Below are positions 18,779-48,332 of a DNA stretch of 64,000 nt, in pieces (position 1 is the stretch's first letter; every line of letters begins with the position of its first letter). The notes beneath the pieces are model-generated. The model searched no databases. It was not told where the DNA came from and saw only the letters and a list, made by a program, of their open reading frames with translations. The position numbers and the translations under genes were made by a program. Location of the stretch: the IMG/VR virus record IMGVR_UViG_3300045999_008996, positions 158,564-222,563 of that record; one strand, given 5' to 3'.

Positions 18779-19822
18779 TTATTTTTTCAATTGAGAGTTA
18801 ATCCAATTATATGTTTTTTCAATACCTTCTTCTAAAGTCATACTGTAGTCCCAACCAAGTTTTTCGCGAATTAGATCATTATTTGAATTGCGACCACGAA
18901 CACCAAGAGGACCGTCAATATGATTCTTTTCTACTACTTTATTAGCAACTCTAGCAGCAGTATCAACAAGTTGATTGATTGTAACCATTTCTTCTGATCC
19001 AATATTAACTGGACCCATGAAATCACTATTCATCATTCTGCGGGTTGCTTCAATGCATTCATCAATATACAGGAAAGAACGAGTCTGTAAACCGTCTCCC
19101 CACACATCAATGGTTCCACCTTCCTCTGGAAGGTAGGCAACTTTACGGCAGATTGCTGCAGGAGATTTTTCCCTTCCTCCTTCCCAGGTTCCTTCAGGTC
19201 CAAAGATATTATGATACCTAGCAACCCTGACAGGAATACCGTAGTTCCTATGATAAGCGAAGTAAAGACGCTCTGAGAAGAGTTTTTCCCAACCATATTC
19301 TGAGTCTGGGTTTGCTGGATATGCGGACTCTTCACGACAATCAGGATTGTCTGGATCTAATTGATTATGCTCTGGATACATGCAGGCAGATCCAGAGTAG
19401 AAAATCTTAGTTTTGTTTACTTCTTTGAAATCATTCAGTTGTCTTTGTGCTTCAAGAACATTCAAATTGATTGTTGCAGAGTTGTGCATGATATCAGCAT
19501 CGTTCTCACCAGTGAAAACGAATCCCGCACCACCCATATCAGCAGCAAACTGATAAATTTCGTCAAAGGTTTCAATGTACCTACTAGGAACAAAATTATA
19601 AAAATTTCTATAAGGACCTTTATATTGAAGAACTCTCTCTACAAAATTTAAGTCTCGCAGATCTCCAATAACAAATTCATGTGCTTCGCTTTCAGAATAT
19701 TCTGGTAGTTTAAGGTCTACACCACGTACCCAATAACCTTCAGATCGTAGTCTTTTTACCATGTGACTTCCAATGAAACCACCAGCACCAAGAACAAGTG
19801 CTGTTTTCTTATATTCACTCAT
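18779..19822 (-). CDS. NAD-dependent epimerase, GDP-mannose 3,5-epimerase-like (WcaG family)
   Basis: GAGGFIGSH, AADMGGAGF, YGWEK, GGREKSPAAICRK. Confidence 0.88.
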   Translation of the reverse strand: MSEYKKTALVLGAGGFIGSHMVKRLRSEGYWVRGVDLKLPEYSESEAHEFVIGDLRDLNFVERVLQYKGPYRNFYNFVPSRYIETFDEIYQFAADMGGAGFVFTGENDADIMHNSATINLNVLEAQRQLNDFKEVNKTKIFYSGSACMYPEHNQLDPDNPDCREESAYPANPDSEYGWEKLFSERLYFAYHRNYGIPVRVARYHNIFGPEGTWEGGREKSPAAICRKVAYLPEEGGTIDVWGDGLQTRSFLYIDECIEATRRMMNSDFMGPVNIGSEEMVTINQLVDTAARVANKVVEKNHIDGPLGVRGRNSNNDLIREKLGWDYSMTLEEGIEKTYNWINSQLKK

Positions 19823-19848
19823 AAACGAATAAATTACTCCTAGTATAT

Positions 19849-19884
19849 ATTATACAAAAAAAGGAGGTTGTTGTCAACCTCCTC
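19849..19884 (-). terminator. Intrinsic terminator overlapping a sigma70 promoter for the sugar island
   Basis: GGAGGTTG-ACAA-CAACCTCC-T7, containing TTGACA-17-TATAAT. Confidence 0.75.
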
Positions 19885-19892
19885 AAGTTATT

Positions 19893-19996
19893 CAGGCTCG
19901 CCACCAATTCTTTGACTGGAAATTGGAAACCAGGCGGGAGAGAGTCCCATCCGCACCAGCAAGAATTTTTATTGTGCCTTATCTTGCGGGCACCAG
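19893..19996 (-). ncRNA. wcaG-like structured RNA (two pseudoknots, UGGYG repeats)
   Basis: GTGCC/GGCAC with GCAAGA/TCTTGC; CTGG/CCAG with CCAATT/AATTGG; TGGTG and TGGCG; upstream of a WcaG-family gene. Confidence 0.7.
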
Positions 19997-20532
19997 GAAG
20001 ACCATTTTTTAGATTTGCTATAAATTCTATTAGCAACTTCCATTTTAGTCATATTATAGTGTTCCATAATAGATTGGATACCAACATACTCTTTACCATC
20101 AACTATAAAAATTTTTTTTGAGGGTTTAACAAAATTTAAAATTCTTTTATTTCTTTCTTCTTCAGAAAGAGAATCCCAATGCTTTTTTACAGAGTGTTTG
20201 ATATTATCTTTATGTTCTTCAGTAATGACTTGTAAAGGTCTAACTTTTTTTAGTTTTTTGCTAATTTTTAGTTTATGTTCTTCACTTAATGGAGTTCTTC
20301 CTTTACTTCCACCACTTTTTCTGTTTAAAAGATTATCTAATATTGATATTAGATATTTTTCGTGTTTTAATGCATCCTCTTCAGAAAGGTTTTTCTTCAA
20401 AAATAATATTTTATCTTTGGTGGGTCTTGGAACATTATGATTTTTATGAAATGCTCTACGACCAGTTCCCTTTCCTATGTAATATGGTGTTCCATTTTCA
20501 CGAAGATATGCATATGTGTAATAGGTCTTCAT
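19969..20532 (-). mobile_element. GIY-YIG homing endonuclease with NUMOD3-like repeats
   Basis: YTYAY...YYIGKG, SEEHKLKIS; AT-rich; own TATAAATA at 20557-20564. Confidence 0.85.
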
Positions 20533-20566
20533 ATAAATTTTACTATTACATAGTATTATTTATATG

Positions 20567-20862
20567 AATGGCTCCACCACTTAGTTTTGAGAAACTAAGA
20601 AAAGTTGGGTTAACTTTGATATCTCGGTAATACCAAAGAAAGCACATAAGAATAGTACATCCCAAAGTTTAAGTTTAATAGCAAAGGGAACTGTGAGTAA
20701 TCCTCCAACAACCTTTATCATCAAACCGTATTTAAATTCTCCCCATAACATAGTTTGATAACCAATTATGAGGAGAATGTTTCCAATCCACCGAAGTAAA
20801 TCAGATTTAGACATAAGGGGTTTTGCTCCCGACCAGTGCTTTTTAAGTCTCTCCGTGACTAT
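20567..20862 (-). ncRNA. Upstream half of the structured RNA array (overlaps a 77-aa ORF)
   Basis: TGGTC and TGGTG units, a cUUCGg hairpin, a 13-bp + 8-bp pseudoknot, CTTAGT/ACTAAG pairing. Confidence 0.45.
20581..20814 (-). CDS. Small multi-TM membrane protein
   Basis: Hydrophobic 77-aa ORF. Confidence 0.6.
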   Translation of the reverse strand: MSKSDLLRWIGNILLIIGYQTMLWGEFKYGLMIKVVGGLLTVPFAIKLKLWDVLFLCAFFGITEISKLTQLFLVSQN

Positions 20863-21111
20863 TTACTCACCATCGTCTCTCACATAACAAGGAACACGAT
20901 CTGGATCTAACCATTTCGCATACTCAATATCCTCCATTGCAGTAGAACATTGTAGCACATTATCAAAAAGATAAATGTCATTCCAGCGTTTTGTATACTC
21001 GTTTTGCTTTTGCATACGGTAATCGGGTTTGCCGTTAATCTCAAGGATACCAACTTCTACGAAACGGTATCCTTCACGTTCCAAAAGAACTTTAGGAAGT
21101 CGTGTCATCAC
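20863..21111 (-). CDS. Hypothetical cyanophage protein
   Basis: ORF track. Confidence 0.7.
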   Translation of the reverse strand: MMTRLPKVLLEREGYRFVEVGILEINGKPDYRMQKQNEYTKRWNDIYLFDNVLQCSTAMEDIEYAKWLDPDRVPCYVRDDGE

Positions 21112-21323
21112 GCCACTTCAACGGATTCAAGATCTGCAAGGACATACTCCATAAGCATTTCATAATCATCAAGAGGATCACCAGAGAATACTACACCTTC
21201 ATTCTCATAGAAACGACGAACCTTTTTGTAGAGTTTCGGATTCTTTACATCAAGGTAGAAGTCACCGTTTGCTGCACCGCGAAGGGTTTGAACGTCTTTC
21301 TTGAATTTTGCTGTGAGAGTCAT
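21108..21323 (-). CDS. Hypothetical cyanophage protein
   Basis: ORF track; sigma70 promoter upstream. Confidence 0.7.
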   Translation of the reverse strand: MTLTAKFKKDVQTLRGAANGDFYLDVKNPKLYKKVRRFYENEGVVFSGDPLDDYEMLMEYVLADLESVEVA

Positions 21324-21376
21324 TGTTTTGAATGTTGACCTTAGTATTATAAGGGTTTGACAGGTAATCTGTCAAG

Positions 21377-21449
21377 TGCTCCTTGCGTGGATCGAACACG
21401 CCTCAGGCGAATTATGAGTTCGCTGCATTCACCAGATTGCTAAAGGAGC
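21377..21449 (-). tRNA. tRNA-Met or Ile2 (CAT)
   Basis: Cloverleaf; GCGAA-CTCATAA-TTCGC. Confidence 0.85.
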
Positions 21450-21453
21450 AAGG

Positions 21454-21541
21454 TACGAGTGGGTGGATTCGAACCACCTCAAAGCCGCTAATCTGGCGGA
21501 AAGGCGTTATAAGTGCCCTCTGACTACCAAGTCTCACTCGC
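21454..21541 (-). tRNA. Atypical 88-nt tRNA, anticodon TAT (Ile), long variable arm, 4-nt D loop
   Basis: GCGAGTG/CACTCGT acceptor; GACT-TGGT-AGTC; loop CTTATAA; GGTGG-TTCGAAT-CCACC. Confidence 0.7.
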
Positions 21542-21579
21542 TTGAACCAGGTCTATTATAGAGGACCTGGAACTCTATG

Positions 21580-23992: not shown

Positions 23993-24078
23993 CGGAAGCG
24001 GTAGGATTTGAACCCACGAACGCTATTAACGTTGGTTGTTTTCAAGACAACTGCCATAAACCACTCGGCCACGCTTCC
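23993..24078 (-). tRNA. tRNA-Ser (TGA)
   Basis: Type II cloverleaf; GTTGT-CTTGAAA-ACAAC. Confidence 0.9.
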
Positions 24079-24088
24079 AGTAGAAGGT

Positions 24089-24340
24089 TCAACGAACCTC
24101 AAAATCCAATCGTTTTACTTTACGTTGGCGTCTTGCTTCTTGAAAAGCAAGATCTTGCGAAGAAAGAACATTTGATTTTTGTTCTTTCTGGATAGAGTTT
24201 AACATAACAATGCGAGATAAGTCAAGTGCTGATATCTTATCTCCACGAATTGTTGCCATATTAGGACAACCACAGGTCACCGTTTTTGAATGATGTCCTG
24301 TTATTTCCTTATTACAATCTTTGCATCTTATTGAAATCAT
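24089..24340 (-). CDS. Small Zn-finger protein
   Basis: CKDC...CGC. Confidence 0.7.
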   Translation of the reverse strand: MISIRCKDCNKEITGHHSKTVTCGCPNMATIRGDKISALDLSRIVMLNSIQKEQKSNVLSSQDLAFQEARRQRKVKRLDFEVR

Positions 24341-24355
24341 GATTCTTCATCCTAT

Positions 24356-24790
24356 TCATTGCAGGTGTGCTCTTAACTGCCAAACAAACTTACCATGAGA
24401 TTCCATTAAATCTTGAACTAAATTTGCTGTAGCATATGACTTTTGATTTTCAGATTCTTCCGAAATCTCTACCATTAAATCACAAAACTTGGTATTGTTA
24501 TCAAGAAGCTCTTGAAGCATTTCTTTTGCTCCAGTTGAACTTGCTGCCTCTTTGATTTGAGTTACCTCAAGCATTCTAGAAAGAGAACTGAGAGGTTTTA
24601 CATTCAAATAACGCATATGTTCCGAAAGACGATCAATCTCTTCAAACATAGTTTCATACTGACCGCCAAAGAGTTGATGAAGTTGAGTGAAGTCTTCACC
24701 TACAACATTCCAATGAAATGCCCAAGTTTTATGGAATAAAACAAAAAGCGATGACTGTGCATCACTCAAGAGTTTATAAAGTTTTTCCAT
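24356..24790 (-). CDS. dps: Dps (DNA-protecting mini-ferritin)
   Basis: FHWNVVGEDFTQLH.LF...IDRLSE; start MEKLY. Confidence 0.85.
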   Translation of the reverse strand: MEKLYKLLSDAQSSLFVLFHKTWAFHWNVVGEDFTQLHQLFGGQYETMFEEIDRLSEHMRYLNVKPLSSLSRMLEVTQIKEAASSTGAKEMLQELLDNNTKFCDLMVEISEESENQKSYATANLVQDLMESHGKFVWQLRAHLQ

Positions 24791-24818
24791 TATACTCTTT
24801 TTATTTTTATTTATCAAG

Positions 24819-24891
24819 TGGGCAAAGAGGGATTCGAACCCCCGACATCCTCCGTGTAAAGGAGACGCTACTACCGCTGAGCTATTTGCCC
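24819..24891 (-). tRNA. tRNA-Val (TAC)
   Basis: Cloverleaf, loop TTTACAC. Confidence 0.9.
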
Positions 24892-24966
24892 TGGCTCCAC
24901 AACCTGGATTCGAACCAGGGACCAAGTGATTAACAGTCACCGACTCTACCGCTGAGCTATTGTGGA
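24892..24966 (-). tRNA. tRNA-Asn (GTT), CCA encoded
   Basis: Loop CTGTTAA. Confidence 0.9.
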
Positions 24967-24970
24967 ATGA

Positions 24971-25041
24971 AGGAAGTTACTGGACTTACACCAGTTACGA
25001 GGGCATTGTCTGCTTGTCTTGATTCTTTGACTTAACTTCCT
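24971..25041 (-). ncRNA. Degenerate tRNA-like element (intact acceptor and T stems, no canonical anticodon arm)
   Basis: AGGAAGTT/AACTTCCT; ACTGG-TGTAAGT-CCAGT; GCA-GACAA-TGC. Confidence 0.55.
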
Positions 25042-25080
25042 TTGGCGTCTTTCTATGCTATCTGCATAACGACTACCAAG

Positions 25081-25152
25081 AGCGAAAGACGAGATTCGAA
25101 CTCGCAACAACCTGCTTGGAAGGCAGGGACTCTACCGTTGAGTTACTTTCGC
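25081..25152 (-). tRNA. tRNA-Gly (TCC)
   Basis: Loop CTTCCAA. Confidence 0.9.
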
Positions 25153-25191
25153 AATGAGACAATCATAAACTATTTTAGTTTGATTGTCAAG

Positions 25192-25273
25192 TGTCGATGA
25201 GAGGACTTGAACCTCCACAGATTAATCTACTGGAACCTAAACCCAGCGCGTCTACCAATTCCGCCACATCGAC
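25192..25273 (-). tRNA. tRNA-Leu (TAG)
   Basis: Type II; loop TTTAGGT. Confidence 0.9.
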
Positions 25274-25277
25274 TTGA

Positions 25278-25324
25278 TGGAGTAAGTATGATATACCTCA
25301 TAAGGATATAACAGTGACTTACCC
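25278..25324 (-). ncRNA. 47-nt armless tRNA-like hairpin with CUUAUGA loop
   Basis: GGGTAAGT/ACTTACTC outer stem, TATATC/GGTATA inner stem, ends ...CTCCA. Confidence 0.45.
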
Positions 25325-25367
25325 TCTATCATTTTATATATTAACAGACTCAAAAGAATCTGTCAAG

Positions 25368-25440
25368 CGTCCTTTGAGAGATTCGAACTCCCGCACATAG
25401 GTTCGTAGCCTACTGCTCTATTCCACTGAGCTAAAAGGAC
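25368..25440 (-). tRNA. tRNA-Arg (ACG)
   Basis: Loop CTACGAA. Confidence 0.9.
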
Positions 25441-25443
25441 AAG

Positions 25444-25515
25444 TTCTGAGGGTAGGATTCGAACCCACGAATGGCGGGACCAAAACCCGCTGCCTTACCG
25501 CTTGGCGACCTCAGA
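25444..25515 (-). tRNA. tRNA-Gln (TTG)
   Basis: Loop TTTTGGT. Confidence 0.9.
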
Positions 25516-25587
25516 AGCCCTCAATTGGATTTGAACCAACGACCTACTCATTACTAGTGAGTTGCTCTACCACTGAGCTATAAGGGC
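25516..25587 (-). tRNA. tRNA-Thr (AGT)
   Basis: ACTCA-CTAGTAA-TGAGT. Confidence 0.85.
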
Positions 25588-25589
25588 GG

Positions 25590-25660
25590 GGTGCCGTGAG
25601 GGAATCGAACCCTCATATAGAGAACCACAATCTCCTGTCTTACCATTAGACTAACGACAC
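25590..25660 (-). tRNA. tRNA-His (GTG); G-1 not encoded
   Basis: Loop TTGTGGT; C73; position -1 is T. Confidence 0.85.
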
Positions 25661-25661
25661 A

Positions 25662-25735
25662 AGGCAGTAGATAGATTTGAACTATCGACCATAGGCATAT
25701 GAGACCCGTGCTCTGCCAGACTGAGCTATACTGCC
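25662..25735 (-). tRNA. tRNA-Met or Ile2 (CAT)
   Basis: Loop CTCATAT. Confidence 0.8.
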
Positions 25736-25737
25736 AA

Positions 25738-25826
25738 CGGAAGTGGTTGGATTCGAACCAACGGATGCCTATAAAGACATCGGCGGATTAGCAATCCACT
25801 GCATTAGACCTCTCTGCCACACTTCC
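25738..25826 (-). tRNA. tRNA-Ser (GCT)
   Basis: Type II; loop TTGCTAA. Confidence 0.9.
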
Positions 25827-25828
25827 AA

Positions 25829-25902
25829 TAGGAATGGTGAGATTCGAACTCACGACCACACGATTATCAGTCGTGTACTCTAACCAACTGAGCTACATTC
25901 CT
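25829..25902 (-). tRNA. tRNA-Ile (GAT)
   Basis: Loop CTGATAA. Confidence 0.9.
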
Positions 25903-25903
25903 G

Positions 25904-25978
25904 TGGTATTCCTAACGGGATTCGAACCCGTGCTGCCACCTTGAAAGGGTGGTGACCTAACCGCTAGTCGATAGGAAC
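25904..25978 (-). tRNA. tRNA-Glu (TTC), CCA encoded
   Basis: Loop CTTTCAA. Confidence 0.9.
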
Positions 25979-25982
25979 TTAA

Positions 25983-26025
25983 TGCTGACGGCATTCTGGA
26001 TTATCAGCTCCAGCGCAAATCAGCA
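25983..26025 (-). ncRNA. 43-nt armless tRNA-like hairpin with GCUGAUAA loop
   Basis: TGCTGAT/GTCAGCA outer stem, CTGGA/TCCAG inner stem. Confidence 0.45.
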
Positions 26026-26026
26026 A

Positions 26027-26098
26027 CGACTCTAACGGGATTTGAACCCGTGATACTACCGTGACAGGGTAGCGTGATAACCGCTTCACTATAGAGTC
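26027..26098 (-). tRNA. tRNA-Asp (GTC)
   Basis: Loop CTGTCAC. Confidence 0.9.
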
Positions 26099-26102
26099 AA
26101 GG

Positions 26103-26184
26103 TGGGAGGAGCAGGATTCGAACCTGCGAAGGTAGAACCGTCTGATTTACAGTCAGATTCCTTTAGCCACTCGGAAATCCTCCC
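26103..26184 (-). tRNA. tRNA-Tyr (GTA)
   Basis: Loop CTGTAAA; variable arm. Confidence 0.9.
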
Positions 26185-26187
26185 AGA

Positions 26188-26260
26188 TGGGTATGGTCGG
26201 GTTCGAACCGACGACTTACAGGTTAAAAGCCCGCTACTCTACCAACTGAGTTACATACCC
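26188..26260 (-). tRNA. tRNA-Lys (TTT)
   Basis: Loop CTTTTAA. Confidence 0.9.
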
Positions 26261-26312
26261 TTAGAATTAAATTGTCAAGGTTCGGGGTGTGGTCTCTCTC
26301 GACCACTTGATT

Positions 26313-26366
26313 AGAATACCACCTTTTGGACTCTGGGGGGAGATTGGTGGACACTTAGGAAACTGG
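26313..26366 (-). promoter_or_regulatory. Phage promoter motif, copy 1 (upstream of the tRNA array)
   Basis: CCAGTT-N4-AAGTGTCCAC-N28-TATTCT. Confidence 0.55.
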
Positions 26367-26376
26367 TCCAAGCAAC

Positions 26377-26410
26377 AAAAAAGGGGAGGAAACTTTTGGT
26401 TTCTCTCCCC
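26377..26410 (-). terminator. Intrinsic terminator
   Basis: GGGGAG-AGAAAC...GTTTC-CTCCCC-TTTTTT. Confidence 0.75.
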
Positions 26411-26435
26411 TCTATTTGCTTTTATGGATTGCATA

Positions 26436-26552
26436 TTACATATGTCTTTCCATTTCAGCAAACAGGGGATTACCCTCAATATGCCAATCACGGCAATCGA
26501 GAGTACTAATCTGTTTGGTGGTGATTTGGAAAGACATTGTTTTCGACCTAAG
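26436..26552 (-). ncRNA. Late-promoter fold-back RNA containing a 33-codon ORF (26436-26537)
   Basis: TATAAATA 26559-26566; ATGTCTTTCCA/TGGAAAGACAT and CAAACAG/CTGTTTG stems; terminator downstream. Confidence 0.55.
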
Positions 26553-26589
26553 TGTTTTTATTTATAAGACTTTTATTTAAAAAGTCTAA

Positions 26590-26663
26590 CGGGTTAGGAG
26601 GGACTCGAACCCCCGACCAATTCATTAGAAGTGAATTGCTCTATCCATCTGAGCTACTAACCC
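26590..26663 (-). tRNA. tRNA-Arg (TCT)
   Basis: Loop CTTCTAA. Confidence 0.9.
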
Positions 26664-26665
26664 AA

Positions 26666-26747
26666 GAGACCTCTCTGTTTGTGCTTCTATGAGAGGCATG
26701 AGAGGGGTGAGACTTATATGAGGTTTGGACCCTCACTGCTCATATGA
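26666..26747 (-). ncRNA. Pseudoknotted leader RNA 5' of tRNA-Arg
   Basis: ATATGAG/CTCATAT with GTGAG/CTCAC; CCTCTC/GAGAGG; TTGACA-17-TACAAT at 26750-26778. Confidence 0.45.
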
Positions 26748-47894: not shown

Positions 47895-48332
47895 TTATTC
47901 GGTTTCCTGACCCTTTCCCTTCTTACCAATATTATACTTCTGCTCCAAAATCCAATCACCCTTGTCCTTATATGCGAGGACTTTAATTTGATTAAGTGGG
48001 GCAATGTCAGAAACTGAATCCTCTTTTACAACAGTAATCAGTCCCCAGTCAGCAAGAAGGCGGGCAATGCGATTACGTCTCTGAACATCATTCACCGTAA
48101 GGTTAGCGTGTTTACCGTCTAGAGCAAACAGTTCCTTAAAGTGAACAATGTAATATCTACCTTGCTTATGCAAAATATGGCAAGATTGATAGAGTTTTTT
48201 CTCCTTTCTTGATGCAACTCCGATGCGTGTCAAAGTCTCACGAACTTTCAAAAAGTCATCTGGTTCATTAAGAATGACCTCCACCATTTGGTCTTGAGAC
48301 CAATTTACTGTAGGTTCTACCGTAGTAGTCAT
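47895..48332 (-). CDS. regA: Translational repressor RegA
   Basis: DDFLKVRETLTRIGVAS, CHILHKQG. Confidence 0.95.
   Translation of the reverse strand: MTTTVEPTVNWSQDQMVEVILNEPDDFLKVRETLTRIGVASRKEKKLYQSCHILHKQGRYYIVHFKELFALDGKHANLTVNDVQRRNRIARLLADWGLITVVKEDSVSDIAPLNQIKVLAYKDKGDWILEQKYNIGKKGKGQETE

What the first reader, a model, noticed from the sequence alone, without database searches (positions are those of the whole stretch)
19893..20862. Large multi-pseudoknot RNA array (extended wcaG-like motif) built from pseudoknot + UGGYG + hairpin units
Seen on the minus strand: repeated units that differ in sequence but share architecture. These are CTGG/CCAG with CCAATT/AATTGG then TGGCG; GTGCC/GGCAC with GCAAGA/TCTTGC then TGGTG; GAGA/TCTC with CTTAGT/ACTAAG then TGGTG; and a 5' AGTC/GACT hairpin then TGGTC. 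Known: the cyanophage wcaG RNA motif is described with two UGGYG copies, upstream of sugar-epimerase or hli genes, function unknown. Here there are about four copies over roughly 400 nt. Inference: a multivalent protein-binding RNA rather than a simple leader. Tandem H-type pseudoknots with A-rich loops recall type III antitoxin RNAs (ToxI), so a decoy or anti-defence role is a testable but speculative idea.
Basis: partly seen in the sequence, partly recalled or inferred. Interest (0 to 1): 0.78.

Follow-up and report, generated by a model that had tools for sequence, protein, structure and literature searches.

The report
Extended wcaG pseudoknot RNA, gene-interrupted
This cyanophage carries the known wcaG RNA plus two further modules of the same "knotted hairpin followed by UGGYG" kind, here separated by a small membrane-protein gene and a mobile endonuclease gene. 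About 140 related phage contigs show that wcaG is only the tail end of a variable-length modular RNA whose function, probably a multi-site binding platform, is still untested.

Summary
Units A and B are the Rfam wcaG motif (19890-19995, minus strand, 83 bits). Unit C (20599-20570) and unit D (20860-20817) are conserved modules with compensatory base changes in relatives.

They are not a contiguous ~400-nt array. They span 970 nt and are split by a conserved 77-aa membrane-protein gene and a 187-aa endonuclease-like cassette. The cassette is an insertion: it is present in 6 contigs and absent from about 90 homologous sites.

In relatives without insertions, 2 to 5-6 modules sit head to tail, 50-59 nt apart. 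Single modules also occur alone between tRNA genes.

The array sits at the 3' end of an early operon. It ends at a terminator that carries the next promoter in its stem-loop (a PeSL), so it is not a simple leader of the epimerase gene.

Best reading: a modular phage RNA that displays repeated single-stranded UGGYG sites for an unknown partner. This is a new variant of a known kind and moderately interesting.

The parts
21346..21375 (-). Sigma-70-type promoter (TTGACA-18-TATAAT). It is the likely start of the early transcript that carries all the modules, and it lies directly after tRNA-Met (21376-21449).
   Evidence: 12/12 consensus match; tRNA from ARAGORN. Its use as a promoter is inferred.
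21108..21323 (-). orf71, a conserved small phage protein (phrog_552), first gene of the operon.
   Evidence: PHROG E=4.8e-26; homologs in 63 loci.
20863..21111 (-). orf82, a conserved small phage protein (phrog_481). Its stop codon (20865-20863) directly precedes unit D.
   Evidence: PHROG E=1.5e-41. A homolog lies within 1.5 kb upstream of the wcaG core in 61 of 97 loci. AF2 model pLDDT 84, with no significant fold match.
20817..20860 (-). Unit D, a type II module. It consists of stem AGUC/GACU, loop ACGGAGA, A-rich linker, loop-linker pair C20855:G20839, (C)UGGUC at 20835-20831, then a small GGG/CCC hairpin. The orf77 AUG follows at 20814.
   Evidence: CM R1 scores 54.1 bits, the only hit in 64 kb, although this sequence was in the training set. 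Covariation in A3: stem 99.6% paired with all 4 pairs compensatory; loop-linker pair kept in 60/60.
20581..20814 (-). orf77, a small predicted membrane protein (phrog_2318) embedded between modules D and C. Its stop codon UAA (20583-20581) lies in the 3' arm of the unit C hairpin.
   Evidence: PHROG E=4.2e-20. Homologs occupy the same position in 35 loci.
20570..20599 (-). Unit C: hairpin CUUAGU/ACUAAG followed by UGGUGGAG. In relatives a GAGUCA...UGACCC hairpin follows and then wcaG directly. Here that hairpin is cut off by the endonuclease cassette.
   Evidence: A1 helix 1: 4 of 6 pairs compensatory, 97.9% paired. Weak wcaG hit of 19.1 bits. No pseudoknot support.
19959..20568 (-). Inserted cassette of about 610 nt. 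It contains TATAAATA (20564-20557), the 187-aa endonuclease-like ORF (19969-20532), and its own variant of wcaG hairpin 1 overlapping the ORF's 3' end.
   Evidence: No homolog in 120 other loci. The same cassette sits at the identical site in L203-L207 and L139, in different downstream backgrounds. Metatranscriptome contigs join 19958 to 20597 and 19937 to 20572. Relatives are annotated 'intron-associated endonuclease 1' or 'UvrC', are multi-copy, and stand free between core genes. Pfam and NCBIfam give no hit.
19890..19995 (-). Canonical wcaG RNA (units B and A): pseudoknotted hairpin 1, UGGUG, central hairpin GGGA/UCCC, pseudoknotted hairpin 2, UGGCGAGCCUGA.
   Evidence: RF01761 at 83.1 bits, E=4.9e-14. 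Covariation in A1 helices 3-6. Pseudoknot complementarity exceeds shuffled pairings in 0 of 200 trials for both hairpins.
19849..19884 (-). Composite terminator/promoter (PeSL type). Stem-loop 19884-19861 with TTGACA (19877-19872) in and around the loop, then a T-run, then TATAAT (19854-19849).
   Evidence: Terminator and 12/12 promoter found by scan. Hairpin -15.2 kcal/mol, z=-4.07. The same arrangement follows the array in most relatives: 77 of 91 have a terminator-like hairpin and 57 of 91 also have both promoter hexamers.
18779..19822 (-). NAD-dependent epimerase/dehydratase gene, the 'wcaG' namesake, transcribed from the PeSL promoter.
   Evidence: Pfam PF01370 E=4e-36. A homolog lies within 600 nt downstream in only 24 of 97 loci.

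Best explanation
What it is (high confidence, about 0.85). The region is the 3' part of an early phage operon (promoter 21375-21346, orf71, orf82, ...) that ends at a composite terminator/promoter. This part is built from RNA modules of one family.

Each module is a short H-type pseudoknot or hairpin with an A-rich loop. Its last helix abuts a single-stranded (C)UGGYG, which is usually followed by a small G/C hairpin. Rfam's wcaG is simply the last two modules plus the hairpin between them.

In this phage the chain is D - orf77 - C - endonuclease cassette - wcaG. Genes have been dropped in at the junctions between modules while the modules were kept. The endonuclease cassette even supplies a replacement hairpin 1 whose pseudoknot covaries.

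How it most likely works (inferred, about 0.4). The modules fold independently as the RNA is made, and each presents one UGGYG. Their number (1 to 5-6), order and type vary while the spacing (50-59 nt) and the pentamer stay fixed. This suggests that they act additively as repeated docking sites for one trans-acting partner, most simply an oligomeric RNA-binding protein of phage or host. That makes the RNA a multivalent platform or sponge early in infection.

Arrays that begin 1-7 nt after a tRNA, or end 31-59 nt before one, would be cut out by tRNA processing. The function therefore does not depend on a linked mRNA.

Shown: the structure, modularity, genomic context, insertion polymorphism and restriction to phage-like contigs. 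Inferred: the transcript limits, independent folding, the existence of a partner and the sponge effect.
For: - Rfam wcaG hit of 83 bits.
- Compensatory changes in the unit C hairpin, wcaG hairpins 1 and 2, pseudoknot 2 and the terminator: 95.9% paired against 38-53% for slid controls.
- Type II stem and loop-linker pairs covary.
- Pseudoknot arms of hairpins 1 and 2 beat shuffled pairings in 0 of 200 trials.
- Contiguous arrays of 2 to 5-6 modules occur in relatives.
- UGGYG-to-UGGYG spacing is 50-59 nt in 145 of 187 intervals.
- Modules occur without any Rfam wcaG hit: single ones between tRNAs, or alone before a PeSL.
- 6 of 94 arrays start 1-7 nt after a tRNA, and 11 of 94 are followed by a tRNA.
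- A terminator-like hairpin follows the array in 77 of 91 loci, and both promoter hexamers are also present in 57 of 91.
- The upstream orf82 is conserved in 61 of 97 loci, against the downstream epimerase in 24 of 97.
- The endonuclease cassette is polymorphic, and its hairpin-1 pseudoknot covaries: GUGCC/GGCAC in the window against GCGCC/GGCGC in L205.
- wcaG-containing sequence, including endonuclease-less joins, is present in metatranscriptome assemblies.
- The discoverers themselves noted that the duplicated UGGYG could be a site for a dimeric protein (PMC2864571 supplement).
Against: - No binding partner was found. The adjacent conserved proteins orf82 and orf71 have no recognisable RNA-binding fold or family.
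- Thermodynamic folding of the window's own units is not better than shuffles.
- Unit C lacks a pseudoknot, and in this window it has lost its following hairpin, so not every module is equivalent.
- The RNA-seq evidence comes from assembled contigs without strand information. It sums over relatives and may include DNA, so the transcript ends are not shown.
- Single modules sitting after each small gene or tRNA fit a cis-acting punctuation or stabiliser role just as well.
Confidence: 0.5

Rival explanations
1. Cis-acting punctuation or stabiliser. Each module marks the 3' end of a cistron or tRNA. It would act as a processing site, or as a block to exonucleases, so that the segments of the early transcript get separate lifetimes.
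For: - Modules sit right after stop codons or tRNA 3' ends: orf82 then D, orf77 then C, endonuclease then wcaG.
- Single modules lie between tRNA genes (L165, L174) or alone before a PeSL (L150, L153, Sf-CH5, S-T4).
- Different gene cassettes are always inserted between modules, never within them.
Against: - Two to five modules stand in tandem with no gene between them in most loci. A single end-mark would not need that.
- The transcript already ends in a strong terminator hairpin (z=-4.07).
- The invariant single-stranded UGGYG is not explained by a purely structural block.
Confidence: 0.2
2. Riboswitch or other cis-regulatory leader, as proposed by Weinberg et al. 2010. The structure would sense a metabolite or signal and control read-through of the terminator into the sugar-modification genes.
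For: - The structure is complex, conserved and pseudoknotted.
- A terminator follows it.
- An epimerase or related sugar gene lies downstream in part of the loci, 24 of 97.
- The discoverers rated it a riboswitch candidate (PMC2864571).
Against: - The downstream gene has its own consensus promoter inside the terminator.
- Downstream genes vary and include tRNAs.
- The number and type of modules vary from 1 to 5-6, which is unlike a single aptamer.
- There is no covariation between the array's 3' part and the terminator's 5' arm: 6.90 against 6.79 +/- 0.11, with 45 of 200 shuffles at least as high.
- Arrays can be flanked by tRNAs on both sides (L095).
Confidence: 0.1
3. Capture of RNA 3' ends. 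UGGY, held between two helices, would pair with the NCCA-3' end of tRNAs, as the UGGN bulge of T-box leaders does. The array would then be a multivalent tRNA (or tRNA-fragment) binder encoded next to the phage tRNA cluster.
For: - UGGUG and UGGCG are complementary to CACCA-3' and CGCCA-3', the commonest tRNA ends (established tRNA knowledge).
- The pentamer always directly abuts a helix, which is a stacking platform.
- Arrays lie in tRNA-rich regions and often touch tRNA genes.
Against: - This rests purely on complementarity of 4-5 nt.
- No T-box features and no Rfam T-box signal were found.
- Nothing here tests binding.
- Proximity to tRNAs may only reflect the hyperplastic region.
Confidence: 0.07
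4. Type III antitoxin-like or decoy RNA (ToxI-like).
For: - Tandem pseudoknots with A-rich loops.
- An abiF RNA motif lies elsewhere in the window.
Against: - The units are not near-identical tandem repeats.
- No toxin gene follows. The next gene is an epimerase.
- The array is found only on phage-like contigs, never beside a defence gene in the 140 loci seen.
Confidence: 0.03
5. DNA-level element. The modules would be conserved mainly as homology arms or folded-DNA sites for cassette exchange, like PeSLs or integron attC sites, and the RNA would be incidental.
For: - At least four different cassettes occupy the same inter-module junction: the 68-aa gene, a gene of about 100 aa, the endonuclease and a 256-aa gene.
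- PeSLs are proposed to mediate such shuffling (PMC2839356, PMC4122927).
Against: - Compensatory changes keep the stems and a pseudoknot pair intact. Homology arms would not need that.
- All modules are co-oriented with transcription.
- No recombinase is linked.
- Cassette exchange is more simply a by-product of conserved flanks.
Confidence: 0.05

Closest known systems
wcaG RNA motif (Rfam RF01761; Weinberg et al. 2010, PMC2864571)
   Same: 19890-19995 is a full-length member at 83 bits. It has two UGGYG copies, three hairpins and pseudoknots, occurs in a cyanophage, and has an epimerase gene downstream.
   Different: - The published motif has two UGGYG copies and is described as a 5'-UTR or riboswitch candidate.
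- Here and in relatives it is the terminal part of a chain of 1 to 5-6 modules.
- The chain includes a second module type (4-bp stem, NNGGNNN loop, loop-linker pairs) that the Rfam model does not describe.
- A terminator-plus-promoter follows the chain, and its conserved partner genes lie upstream.
PeSL composite terminator/promoter elements of T4-like phages (Arbiol 2010, PMC2839356; Comeau 2014, PMC4122927)
   Same: The element at 19884-19849 is a stem-loop terminator with an early sigma-70 promoter built into it. It lies at a boundary where gene cassettes come and go.
   Different: PeSLs were described in coliphage, vibriophage and similar T4 relatives as DNA-level shuffling sites. Here a long structured RNA precedes the PeSL, and cassettes are inserted between RNA modules rather than between PeSLs.
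Multi-site sponge RNAs such as CsrB/RsmZ (general knowledge)
   Same: There are many repeats of a short single-stranded motif presented by small structures. Copy number varies and the function would be additive.
   Different: The motif is UGGYG next to a pseudoknot, not GGA in hairpin loops. No CsrA-like partner is known in picocyanobacteria or was found here. This is an analogy of mechanism only.
ToxI and other type III antitoxin RNAs (general knowledge)
   Same: Tandem pseudoknot units with A-rich single strands, followed by a terminator.
   Different: ToxI units are near-identical 36-nt repeats cut by the adjacent toxin. Here the units differ in sequence, are 50-59 nt apart, and no toxin gene is adjacent.
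T4 stable RNAs C and D (species 1 and 2) of the T4 tRNA cluster, and the phage-borne GOLLD/ROOL RNAs near tRNA genes (general knowledge)
   Same: They are phage-encoded structured RNAs of unknown function, co-located with tRNA genes and sometimes flanked by them, so that tRNA processing would release them.
   Different: There is no sequence or structural similarity. Those RNAs are single large folds, not chains of repeated modules.
T-box leader UGGN bulge (general knowledge)
   Same: A conserved UGGN/UGGY single strand lies between helices and is complementary to tRNA NCCA-3'.
   Different: There is no Stem I, no specifier and no antiterminator/terminator switch. The resemblance rests on 4 nt only.

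Membership tests
wcaG RNA (RF01761) | Covariance-model score at or above the curated gathering score (42 bits) | tested here: met
   19890-19995(-) scores 83.1 bits. Unit C alone scores 19.1 bits and unit D gives no hit, so only units A and B are members in the Rfam sense.
wcaG RNA (RF01761) | Two conserved UGGYG copies, each directly 3' of a hairpin | tested here: met
   UGGUG at 19958-19954 and UGGCG at 19903-19899. The feature is stated in the PMC2864571 supplement.
wcaG RNA (RF01761) | Hairpins and pseudoknots supported by covariation | tested here: met
   A1 helices 3-6: 6/6, 1/4, 2/4 and 5/6 pairs have changes on both sides. Pseudoknot arms beat shuffles in 0 of 200 trials.
wcaG RNA (RF01761) | Lies in the 5' UTR of the downstream exopolysaccharide or high-light gene (cis-regulatory) | tested here: not met
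   A terminator (z=-4.07) with an embedded 12/12 promoter separates it from the epimerase gene. The same holds in most relatives. Epimerase is downstream in only 24 of 97 loci. Read-through was not measured.
Extended UGGYG module family (defined here) | Type II module: 4-bp stem, 7-nt loop NNGGNNN, A-rich linker, loop position 2 paired to the base 4 nt before UGG, then (C)UGGUSG | tested here: met
   Unit D at 20860-20828 scores 54.1 bits with CM R1 (it was part of the training set). Covariation is shown.
Type III toxin-antitoxin antitoxin RNA (ToxI-like) | Array of near-identical tandem direct repeats | tested here: not met
   Tandem Repeats Finder and the direct-repeat search find none in 19700-21000.
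Type III toxin-antitoxin antitoxin RNA (ToxI-like) | Toxin endoribonuclease gene immediately downstream of the repeats and terminator | tested here: not met
   The downstream gene is an NAD-dependent epimerase/dehydratase (PF01370, E=4e-36).
Type III toxin-antitoxin antitoxin RNA (ToxI-like) | Processing into unit-length RNAs by the toxin | not testable with these tools
   This needs small-RNA sequencing of infected cells.
PeSL composite terminator/promoter | Stem-loop plus T-run overlapping a sigma-70 early promoter, at the borders of variable genes | tested here: met
   The definition comes from PMC4122927 and PMC2839356.
Free-standing homing endonuclease (GIY-YIG type) | Recognisable GIY-YIG catalytic domain | tested here: inconclusive
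   Pfam, NCBIfam and PDB sequence searches give no significant hit. PHROG families of unknown function match the N-terminus. Relatives are annotated 'intron-associated endonuclease 1' or 'UvrC'. A GIY...YIG-like N-terminus (YAYL...YYIGKG) is seen by eye only.
Free-standing homing endonuclease (GIY-YIG type) | Presence/absence polymorphism at one precise site between conserved sequences, and multiple copies or contexts in phage genomes | tested here: met
   The identical site is occupied in the window, L203-L207 and L139, and is empty in about 90 homologous arrays. There are 6 places in S-SRM01, and a copy between uvsY and a baseplate gene in RN05-S.
T-box riboswitch | Stem I with specifier loop, and an antiterminator/terminator switch | tested here: not met
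   No Rfam T-box signal even at E<=10. No terminator-array covariation.

The most novel reading that the evidence does not exclude
The extended wcaG array would be an autonomous phage non-coding RNA, released by the terminator and by tRNA-processing enzymes. Its repeated, helix-flanked UGGY sites would capture the NCCA-3' ends of tRNAs (T-box-like pairing) or titrate a host RNA-binding protein. It would then be a phage-encoded multivalent trap acting on the host translation or RNA-decay machinery early in infection, and possibly a model for the other unexplained structured RNAs that cluster with phage tRNA genes (manA, abiF, T4 RNAs C/D, ROOL/GOLLD).
Probability: 0.12. Interest if true: 0.85.

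Novelty: new variant of a known kind. Interest (0 to 1): 0.55.

Why it matters
wcaG has been an orphan riboswitch candidate since 2010, with no follow-up in the literature that could be searched here. This analysis changes what should be tested:
- The motif is the end of a modular chain of 1 to 5-6 modules, with a second module type.
- The chain sits at the tail of an early operon or between tRNAs, upstream of a terminator that carries its own promoter.
- Its conserved partners lie upstream.

Experiments should therefore look for a multivalent partner of UGGYG and for a released or 3'-UTR RNA, not for a ligand that controls an epimerase gene.

The analysis also shows structured RNA modules acting as fixed points between which phage gene cassettes are exchanged. 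One of these is a homing-endonuclease-like cassette that rebuilds the module it displaces.

Tried and rejected
- **Programmed stop-codon read-through from orf82 into orf77.** The two are in frame in the window but not in 17 of 20 relatives. Rejected.
- **Antiterminator pairing between the array and the terminator.** No covariation.
No better than shuffled pairings.
- **orf82 as the RNA-binding partner.** The AF2 model is good (pLDDT 84), but Foldseek against PDB and AFDB clusters gives nothing significant (best E about 0.05-0.2, TM below 0.5). The Atlas search finds only unnamed viral clusters. No conclusion.
- **Endonuclease domain assignment.** Pfam, NCBIfam and PDB sequence searches give no hits.
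- **Identity of the phage.** No near-identical record in the phage collection. The sequence occurs in lake, freshwater and river metagenomes.
- **Thermodynamic support for the window's units.** Weak.
- **G:U against A:C counts as a strand test.** 27 against 13, too weak to use.
- **Host copies.** The genome scan found wcaG only on five small MAG contigs that look like mis-binned phage, and none in cyanobacterial genomes.
- **Metatranscriptome depth as evidence for termination.** Depth is high over wcaG and the upstream genes and low over the epimerase gene. It is confounded by summing over relatives at 90% identity or more and by possible DNA, so it counts only as evidence that the region is present in RNA libraries.
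- **Other Rfam families at E<=10 in 19780-20920.** Only noise.
- **A second structure prediction, for the endonuclease.** Not run, because it is peripheral.
Full report
**Observation**

On the minus strand, Rfam's wcaG model (RF01761) matches 19890-19995 with 83.1 bits against a gathering score of 42.
- Hairpin GCAAGA/UCUUGC with loop GGCAC paired to upstream GUGCC, then UGGUG.
- Hairpin CCAAUU/AAUUGG with loop CCAG paired to upstream CUGG, then UGGCG.

The other two units are also present:
- CUUAGU/ACUAAG followed by UGGUGGAG, at 20599-20572.
- AGUC/GACU followed by an A-rich linker and CUGGUCGG, at 20860-20828.

Two ORFs lie between them:
- A 77-aa ORF (20581-20814; phrog_2318, E=4e-20).
- A 187-aa ORF (19969-20532).

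The four units therefore span 970 nt, of which about 800 nt are coding. The bare pattern 'hairpin of at least 6 bp abutting TGGYG' is only moderately enriched in the window: 13 occurrences against 5.1 +/- 1.5 in shuffles. The units do not fold better than shuffled sequence, with z-scores of -1.1, -1.6 and +0.9. The case rests on comparison with relatives.

**Relatives**

An exact-pattern scan of IMG/VR with the wcaG core returned 119 stretches, about 97 of them genuine wcaG loci. A second scan with the unit-D pattern added about 45 more. These give three results.

1. *Unit C is conserved and normally touches wcaG.* In many loci the homolog of the 77-aa gene ends in the unit C hairpin, followed by UGGUGGAGUCA-N-UGACCC and then directly by wcaG hairpin 1. 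In a 24-sequence alignment the unit C hairpin has compensatory changes at 4 of 6 pairs and is 97.9% paired. The whole structure (unit C, wcaG and terminator) is 95.9% paired, against 38-53% when partners are slid by 1-3 columns.

2. *Unit D represents a second module type.* It has a 4-bp stem, a 7-nt loop NNGGNNN, an A-rich linker and (C)UGGUSG.
   - The pattern occurs 154 times on the sense strand and 6 times on the antisense strand of the 98 loci. Nearly all copies lie within about 1 kb upstream of the wcaG core.
   - The stem covaries (AGUC/GACU, AGAC/GUCU, CGUC/GACG, CGUG/CACG, CAUG/CAUG).
   - Loop position 2 pairs with the base four positions before UGG in 41/42 and 60/60 sequences (C:G or U:A).
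   - In the long-linker class, loop position 5 pairs with the neighbouring linker base in 41/42 sequences (A:U, G:C, U:A).
   - This module is therefore also an H-type pseudoknot, with an invariant GG left unpaired.

3. *The pseudoknots of wcaG hairpins 1 and 2 hold up; unit C's does not.* For hairpins 1 and 2, complementarity exceeds shuffled pairings in 0 of 200 trials.

The refutation criterion 'no covariation outside 19893-19960' is therefore not met.

**Architecture of the family**

- Around the wcaG core there are 2 to 5-6 contiguous modules (31, 35, 23, 3 and 1 distinct loci). Examples are L044, L049, L017 and L095.
- Successive UGGYG pentamers are 50-59 nt apart in 145 of 187 intervals.
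- The type II module can replace wcaG hairpin 1 (L067, L095, L006, L054).
- Modules also occur without any Rfam wcaG hit: one module before the terminator in phages Sf-CH5 and S-T4, one module between tRNA genes (L165, L174), one after a tRNA and before a terminator (L150, L153), and two-module arrays lacking the central hairpin (L160, L172, L190).
- The 2010 discovery paper describes two UGGYG copies and suggests a dimeric protein. A note in its alignment file mentions hits that 'trash P1, P2 or P3'. I found no later study of the motif.

**Context**

Directly after the last UGGCG comes a 10-bp stem-loop plus T-run (19884-19854; -15.2 kcal/mol, z=-4.07). It carries TTGACA in and around its loop, with TATAAT 17 nt downstream, a 12/12 sigma-70 promoter. 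This is the composite terminator/promoter (PeSL) described for T4-like phages (PMC2839356, PMC4122927).

Of 91 distinct downstream flanks:
- 77 have a terminator-like hairpin.
- 64 have a -10-like hexamer after it.
- 57 also have a -35-like hexamer in the stem-loop.
- Most of the rest have a hairpin followed by a tRNA gene.

The array's steady neighbours lie upstream. A homolog of orf82 (phrog_481) is within 1.5 kb upstream in 61 of 97 loci, whereas an epimerase homolog is within 600 nt downstream in only 24 of 97.

In the window, a perfect promoter at 21375-21346, right after tRNA-Met, would start a transcript running through orf71, orf82, D, orf77, C, the 187-aa ORF and wcaG to the terminator. 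This transcript is inferred, not shown.

Six of 94 arrays begin 1-7 nt after a tRNA gene, 11 are followed by a tRNA 31-59 nt later, and L095 has tRNAs on both sides. The array's 3' part shows no covariation with the terminator's 5' arm.

wcaG was found only on phage contigs, or on small MAG contigs that look like phage, and in no cyanobacterial genome.

**The insertion**

- *Absent from other arrays.* The 187-aa ORF has no homolog in the other 120 loci then held.
- *Same site in a few close relatives.* A protein scan found it, at 89-99% identity, at exactly the same site in five more contigs (L203-L207), and its 3' end on L139. These differ in hairpin 2, terminator and downstream gene.
- *Distant relatives.* More distant relatives lie in unrelated places. 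One sits between uvsY and a baseplate gene, annotated 'intron-associated endonuclease 1', and S-SRM01 has six copies.
- *RNA joins.* Metatranscriptome contigs of close relatives join 19958 to 20597 and 19937 to 20572, that is, without the cassette.
- *What the cassette replaces.* The cassette (about 20568-19959) replaces the hairpin that normally follows unit C and the ancestral hairpin 1.
- *What the cassette brings.* It brings TATAAATA (the T4 late-promoter consensus, from general knowledge) and a new hairpin 1 that overlaps the ORF's last codons.
- *Covariation.* The pseudoknot of this new hairpin covaries between contigs: GUGCC/GGCAC against GCGCC/GGCGC.
- *Fold not confirmed.* Domain searches did not confirm a GIY-YIG fold, so 'homing endonuclease' rests on behaviour and on annotated relatives.
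- *Other cassettes.* Other cassettes occupy the same junction in other phages: a 68-aa coiled-coil gene (L001), a gene of about 100 aa with an ACACACA leader (L173, L182, L192, L197), and a 256-aa gene (S-T4).

**Interpretation**

What the element is seems secure. It is a modular structured RNA of which Rfam's wcaG is the terminal pair of modules. In this phage it is split by one conserved small gene and one mobile gene.

What it does is inferred. The invariant, helix-abutting, single-stranded UGGYG, the regular spacing and the free variation in module number, type and order argue for additive docking sites for one partner. The tRNA-flanked and single-module cases argue that the function does not depend on a particular downstream gene.

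I favour a multivalent binding platform or sponge for an RNA-binding protein (about 0.4). The rivals are:
- A cis-acting punctuation or stabiliser role (0.2).
- The original riboswitch or leader idea (0.1).
- Capture of tRNA NCCA ends (0.07).
- A DNA-level recombination role (0.05).
- A ToxI-like role (0.03).

The ToxI analogy fails on repeat identity and on the absence of a toxin gene.

**Limits**

- RNA evidence is restricted to assembled contigs from four freshwater and river metatranscriptomes. They carry no strand information, sum over relatives and may include DNA.
- No partner was identified. orf82 has a confident model but no informative fold match.
- The covariation controls do not fully remove phylogenetic signal. 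However, independent combinations of the two type II loop-linker pairs, and many distinct stem variants, argue against inheritance alone.

**Verdict**

This is a new variant of a known kind, with interest 0.55.

Noticed in passing
window 26669-26705 (-): An abiF RNA motif (RF03085, 41.3 bits against a gathering score of 37) lies 6 nt upstream of the first tRNA of a cluster of about 20 tRNAs (23993-26663). wcaG, manA and abiF RNAs also cluster with tRNAs in S-CREM1 (PMC9964418) and in loci L150, L153, L160, L177 and L190.
   Followed up: partly
window 21376-21449 (-): ARAGORN calls a tRNA-Met(CAT) that is missing from the Rfam gathering list. A perfect sigma-70 promoter (21375-21346) starts immediately after it. 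The stretch at about 21455-21545 also looks tRNA-like by eye; compare the 95-nt 'tRNA-Ile' at the same place in SynMITS9220M01.
   Followed up: partly
window 19959-20568 (-); L203-L207, L139: The endonuclease-like cassette sits at the identical inter-module site in several contigs that differ in hairpin 2, terminator and downstream gene. Sequence identity between backgrounds runs through the conserved wcaG core TGGTGCGGATGGGACTCTCTCCCGCCTGGTTTC. That makes the core a plausible homing target.
   Followed up: partly
window 20557-20564 (-): TATAAATA, the T4 late-promoter consensus, lies 25 nt upstream of the endonuclease ATG, inside the inserted DNA. The cassette may bring its own late expression signal.
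   Followed up: no
window 19990-20010 vs 19953-19973: The last codons of the endonuclease ORF contain a 76% copy of 'A-rich loop + 3' arm + UGGUGC' of hairpin 1. On the minus strand these read AAAAAAUGGUCUUCCUGGUGC and AAUAAAAAUUCUUGCUGGUGC. This may be a remnant of a duplicated or displaced module.
   Followed up: no
L001:1862-2201; L173, L182, L192, L197; L003:2465-3280: At least three other gene cassettes occupy the same junction after 'UGGUGGAGUCA..GACCC' in other phages: a 68-aa coiled-coil-like gene, a gene of about 100 aa preceded by an ACACACA-rich leader, and a 256-aa gene. L192 is the closest endonuclease-less relative of the window's D-orf77-C segment.
   Followed up: partly
window 20863-20814 (-): orf82 and orf77 are in the same frame, with a single UAA and no other stop codon between them. 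In 17 of 20 relatives they are not in frame, so this is coincidence rather than programmed read-through.
   Followed up: yes
window, whole: TGGTGGAG occurs 9 times against 1.2 expected. The copy at 48279-48286 was read and is coding; the other sites outside unit C were not read and are only presumed to be coding Gly-Gly (GGT-GGA) context. Only the unit C copy is part of a module.
   Followed up: partly
window 20822-20871 in run X18: A high-depth metatranscriptome contig of a relative has 690 other letters in place of the unit D region, between orf82 and orf77. That junction is variable too.
   Followed up: no
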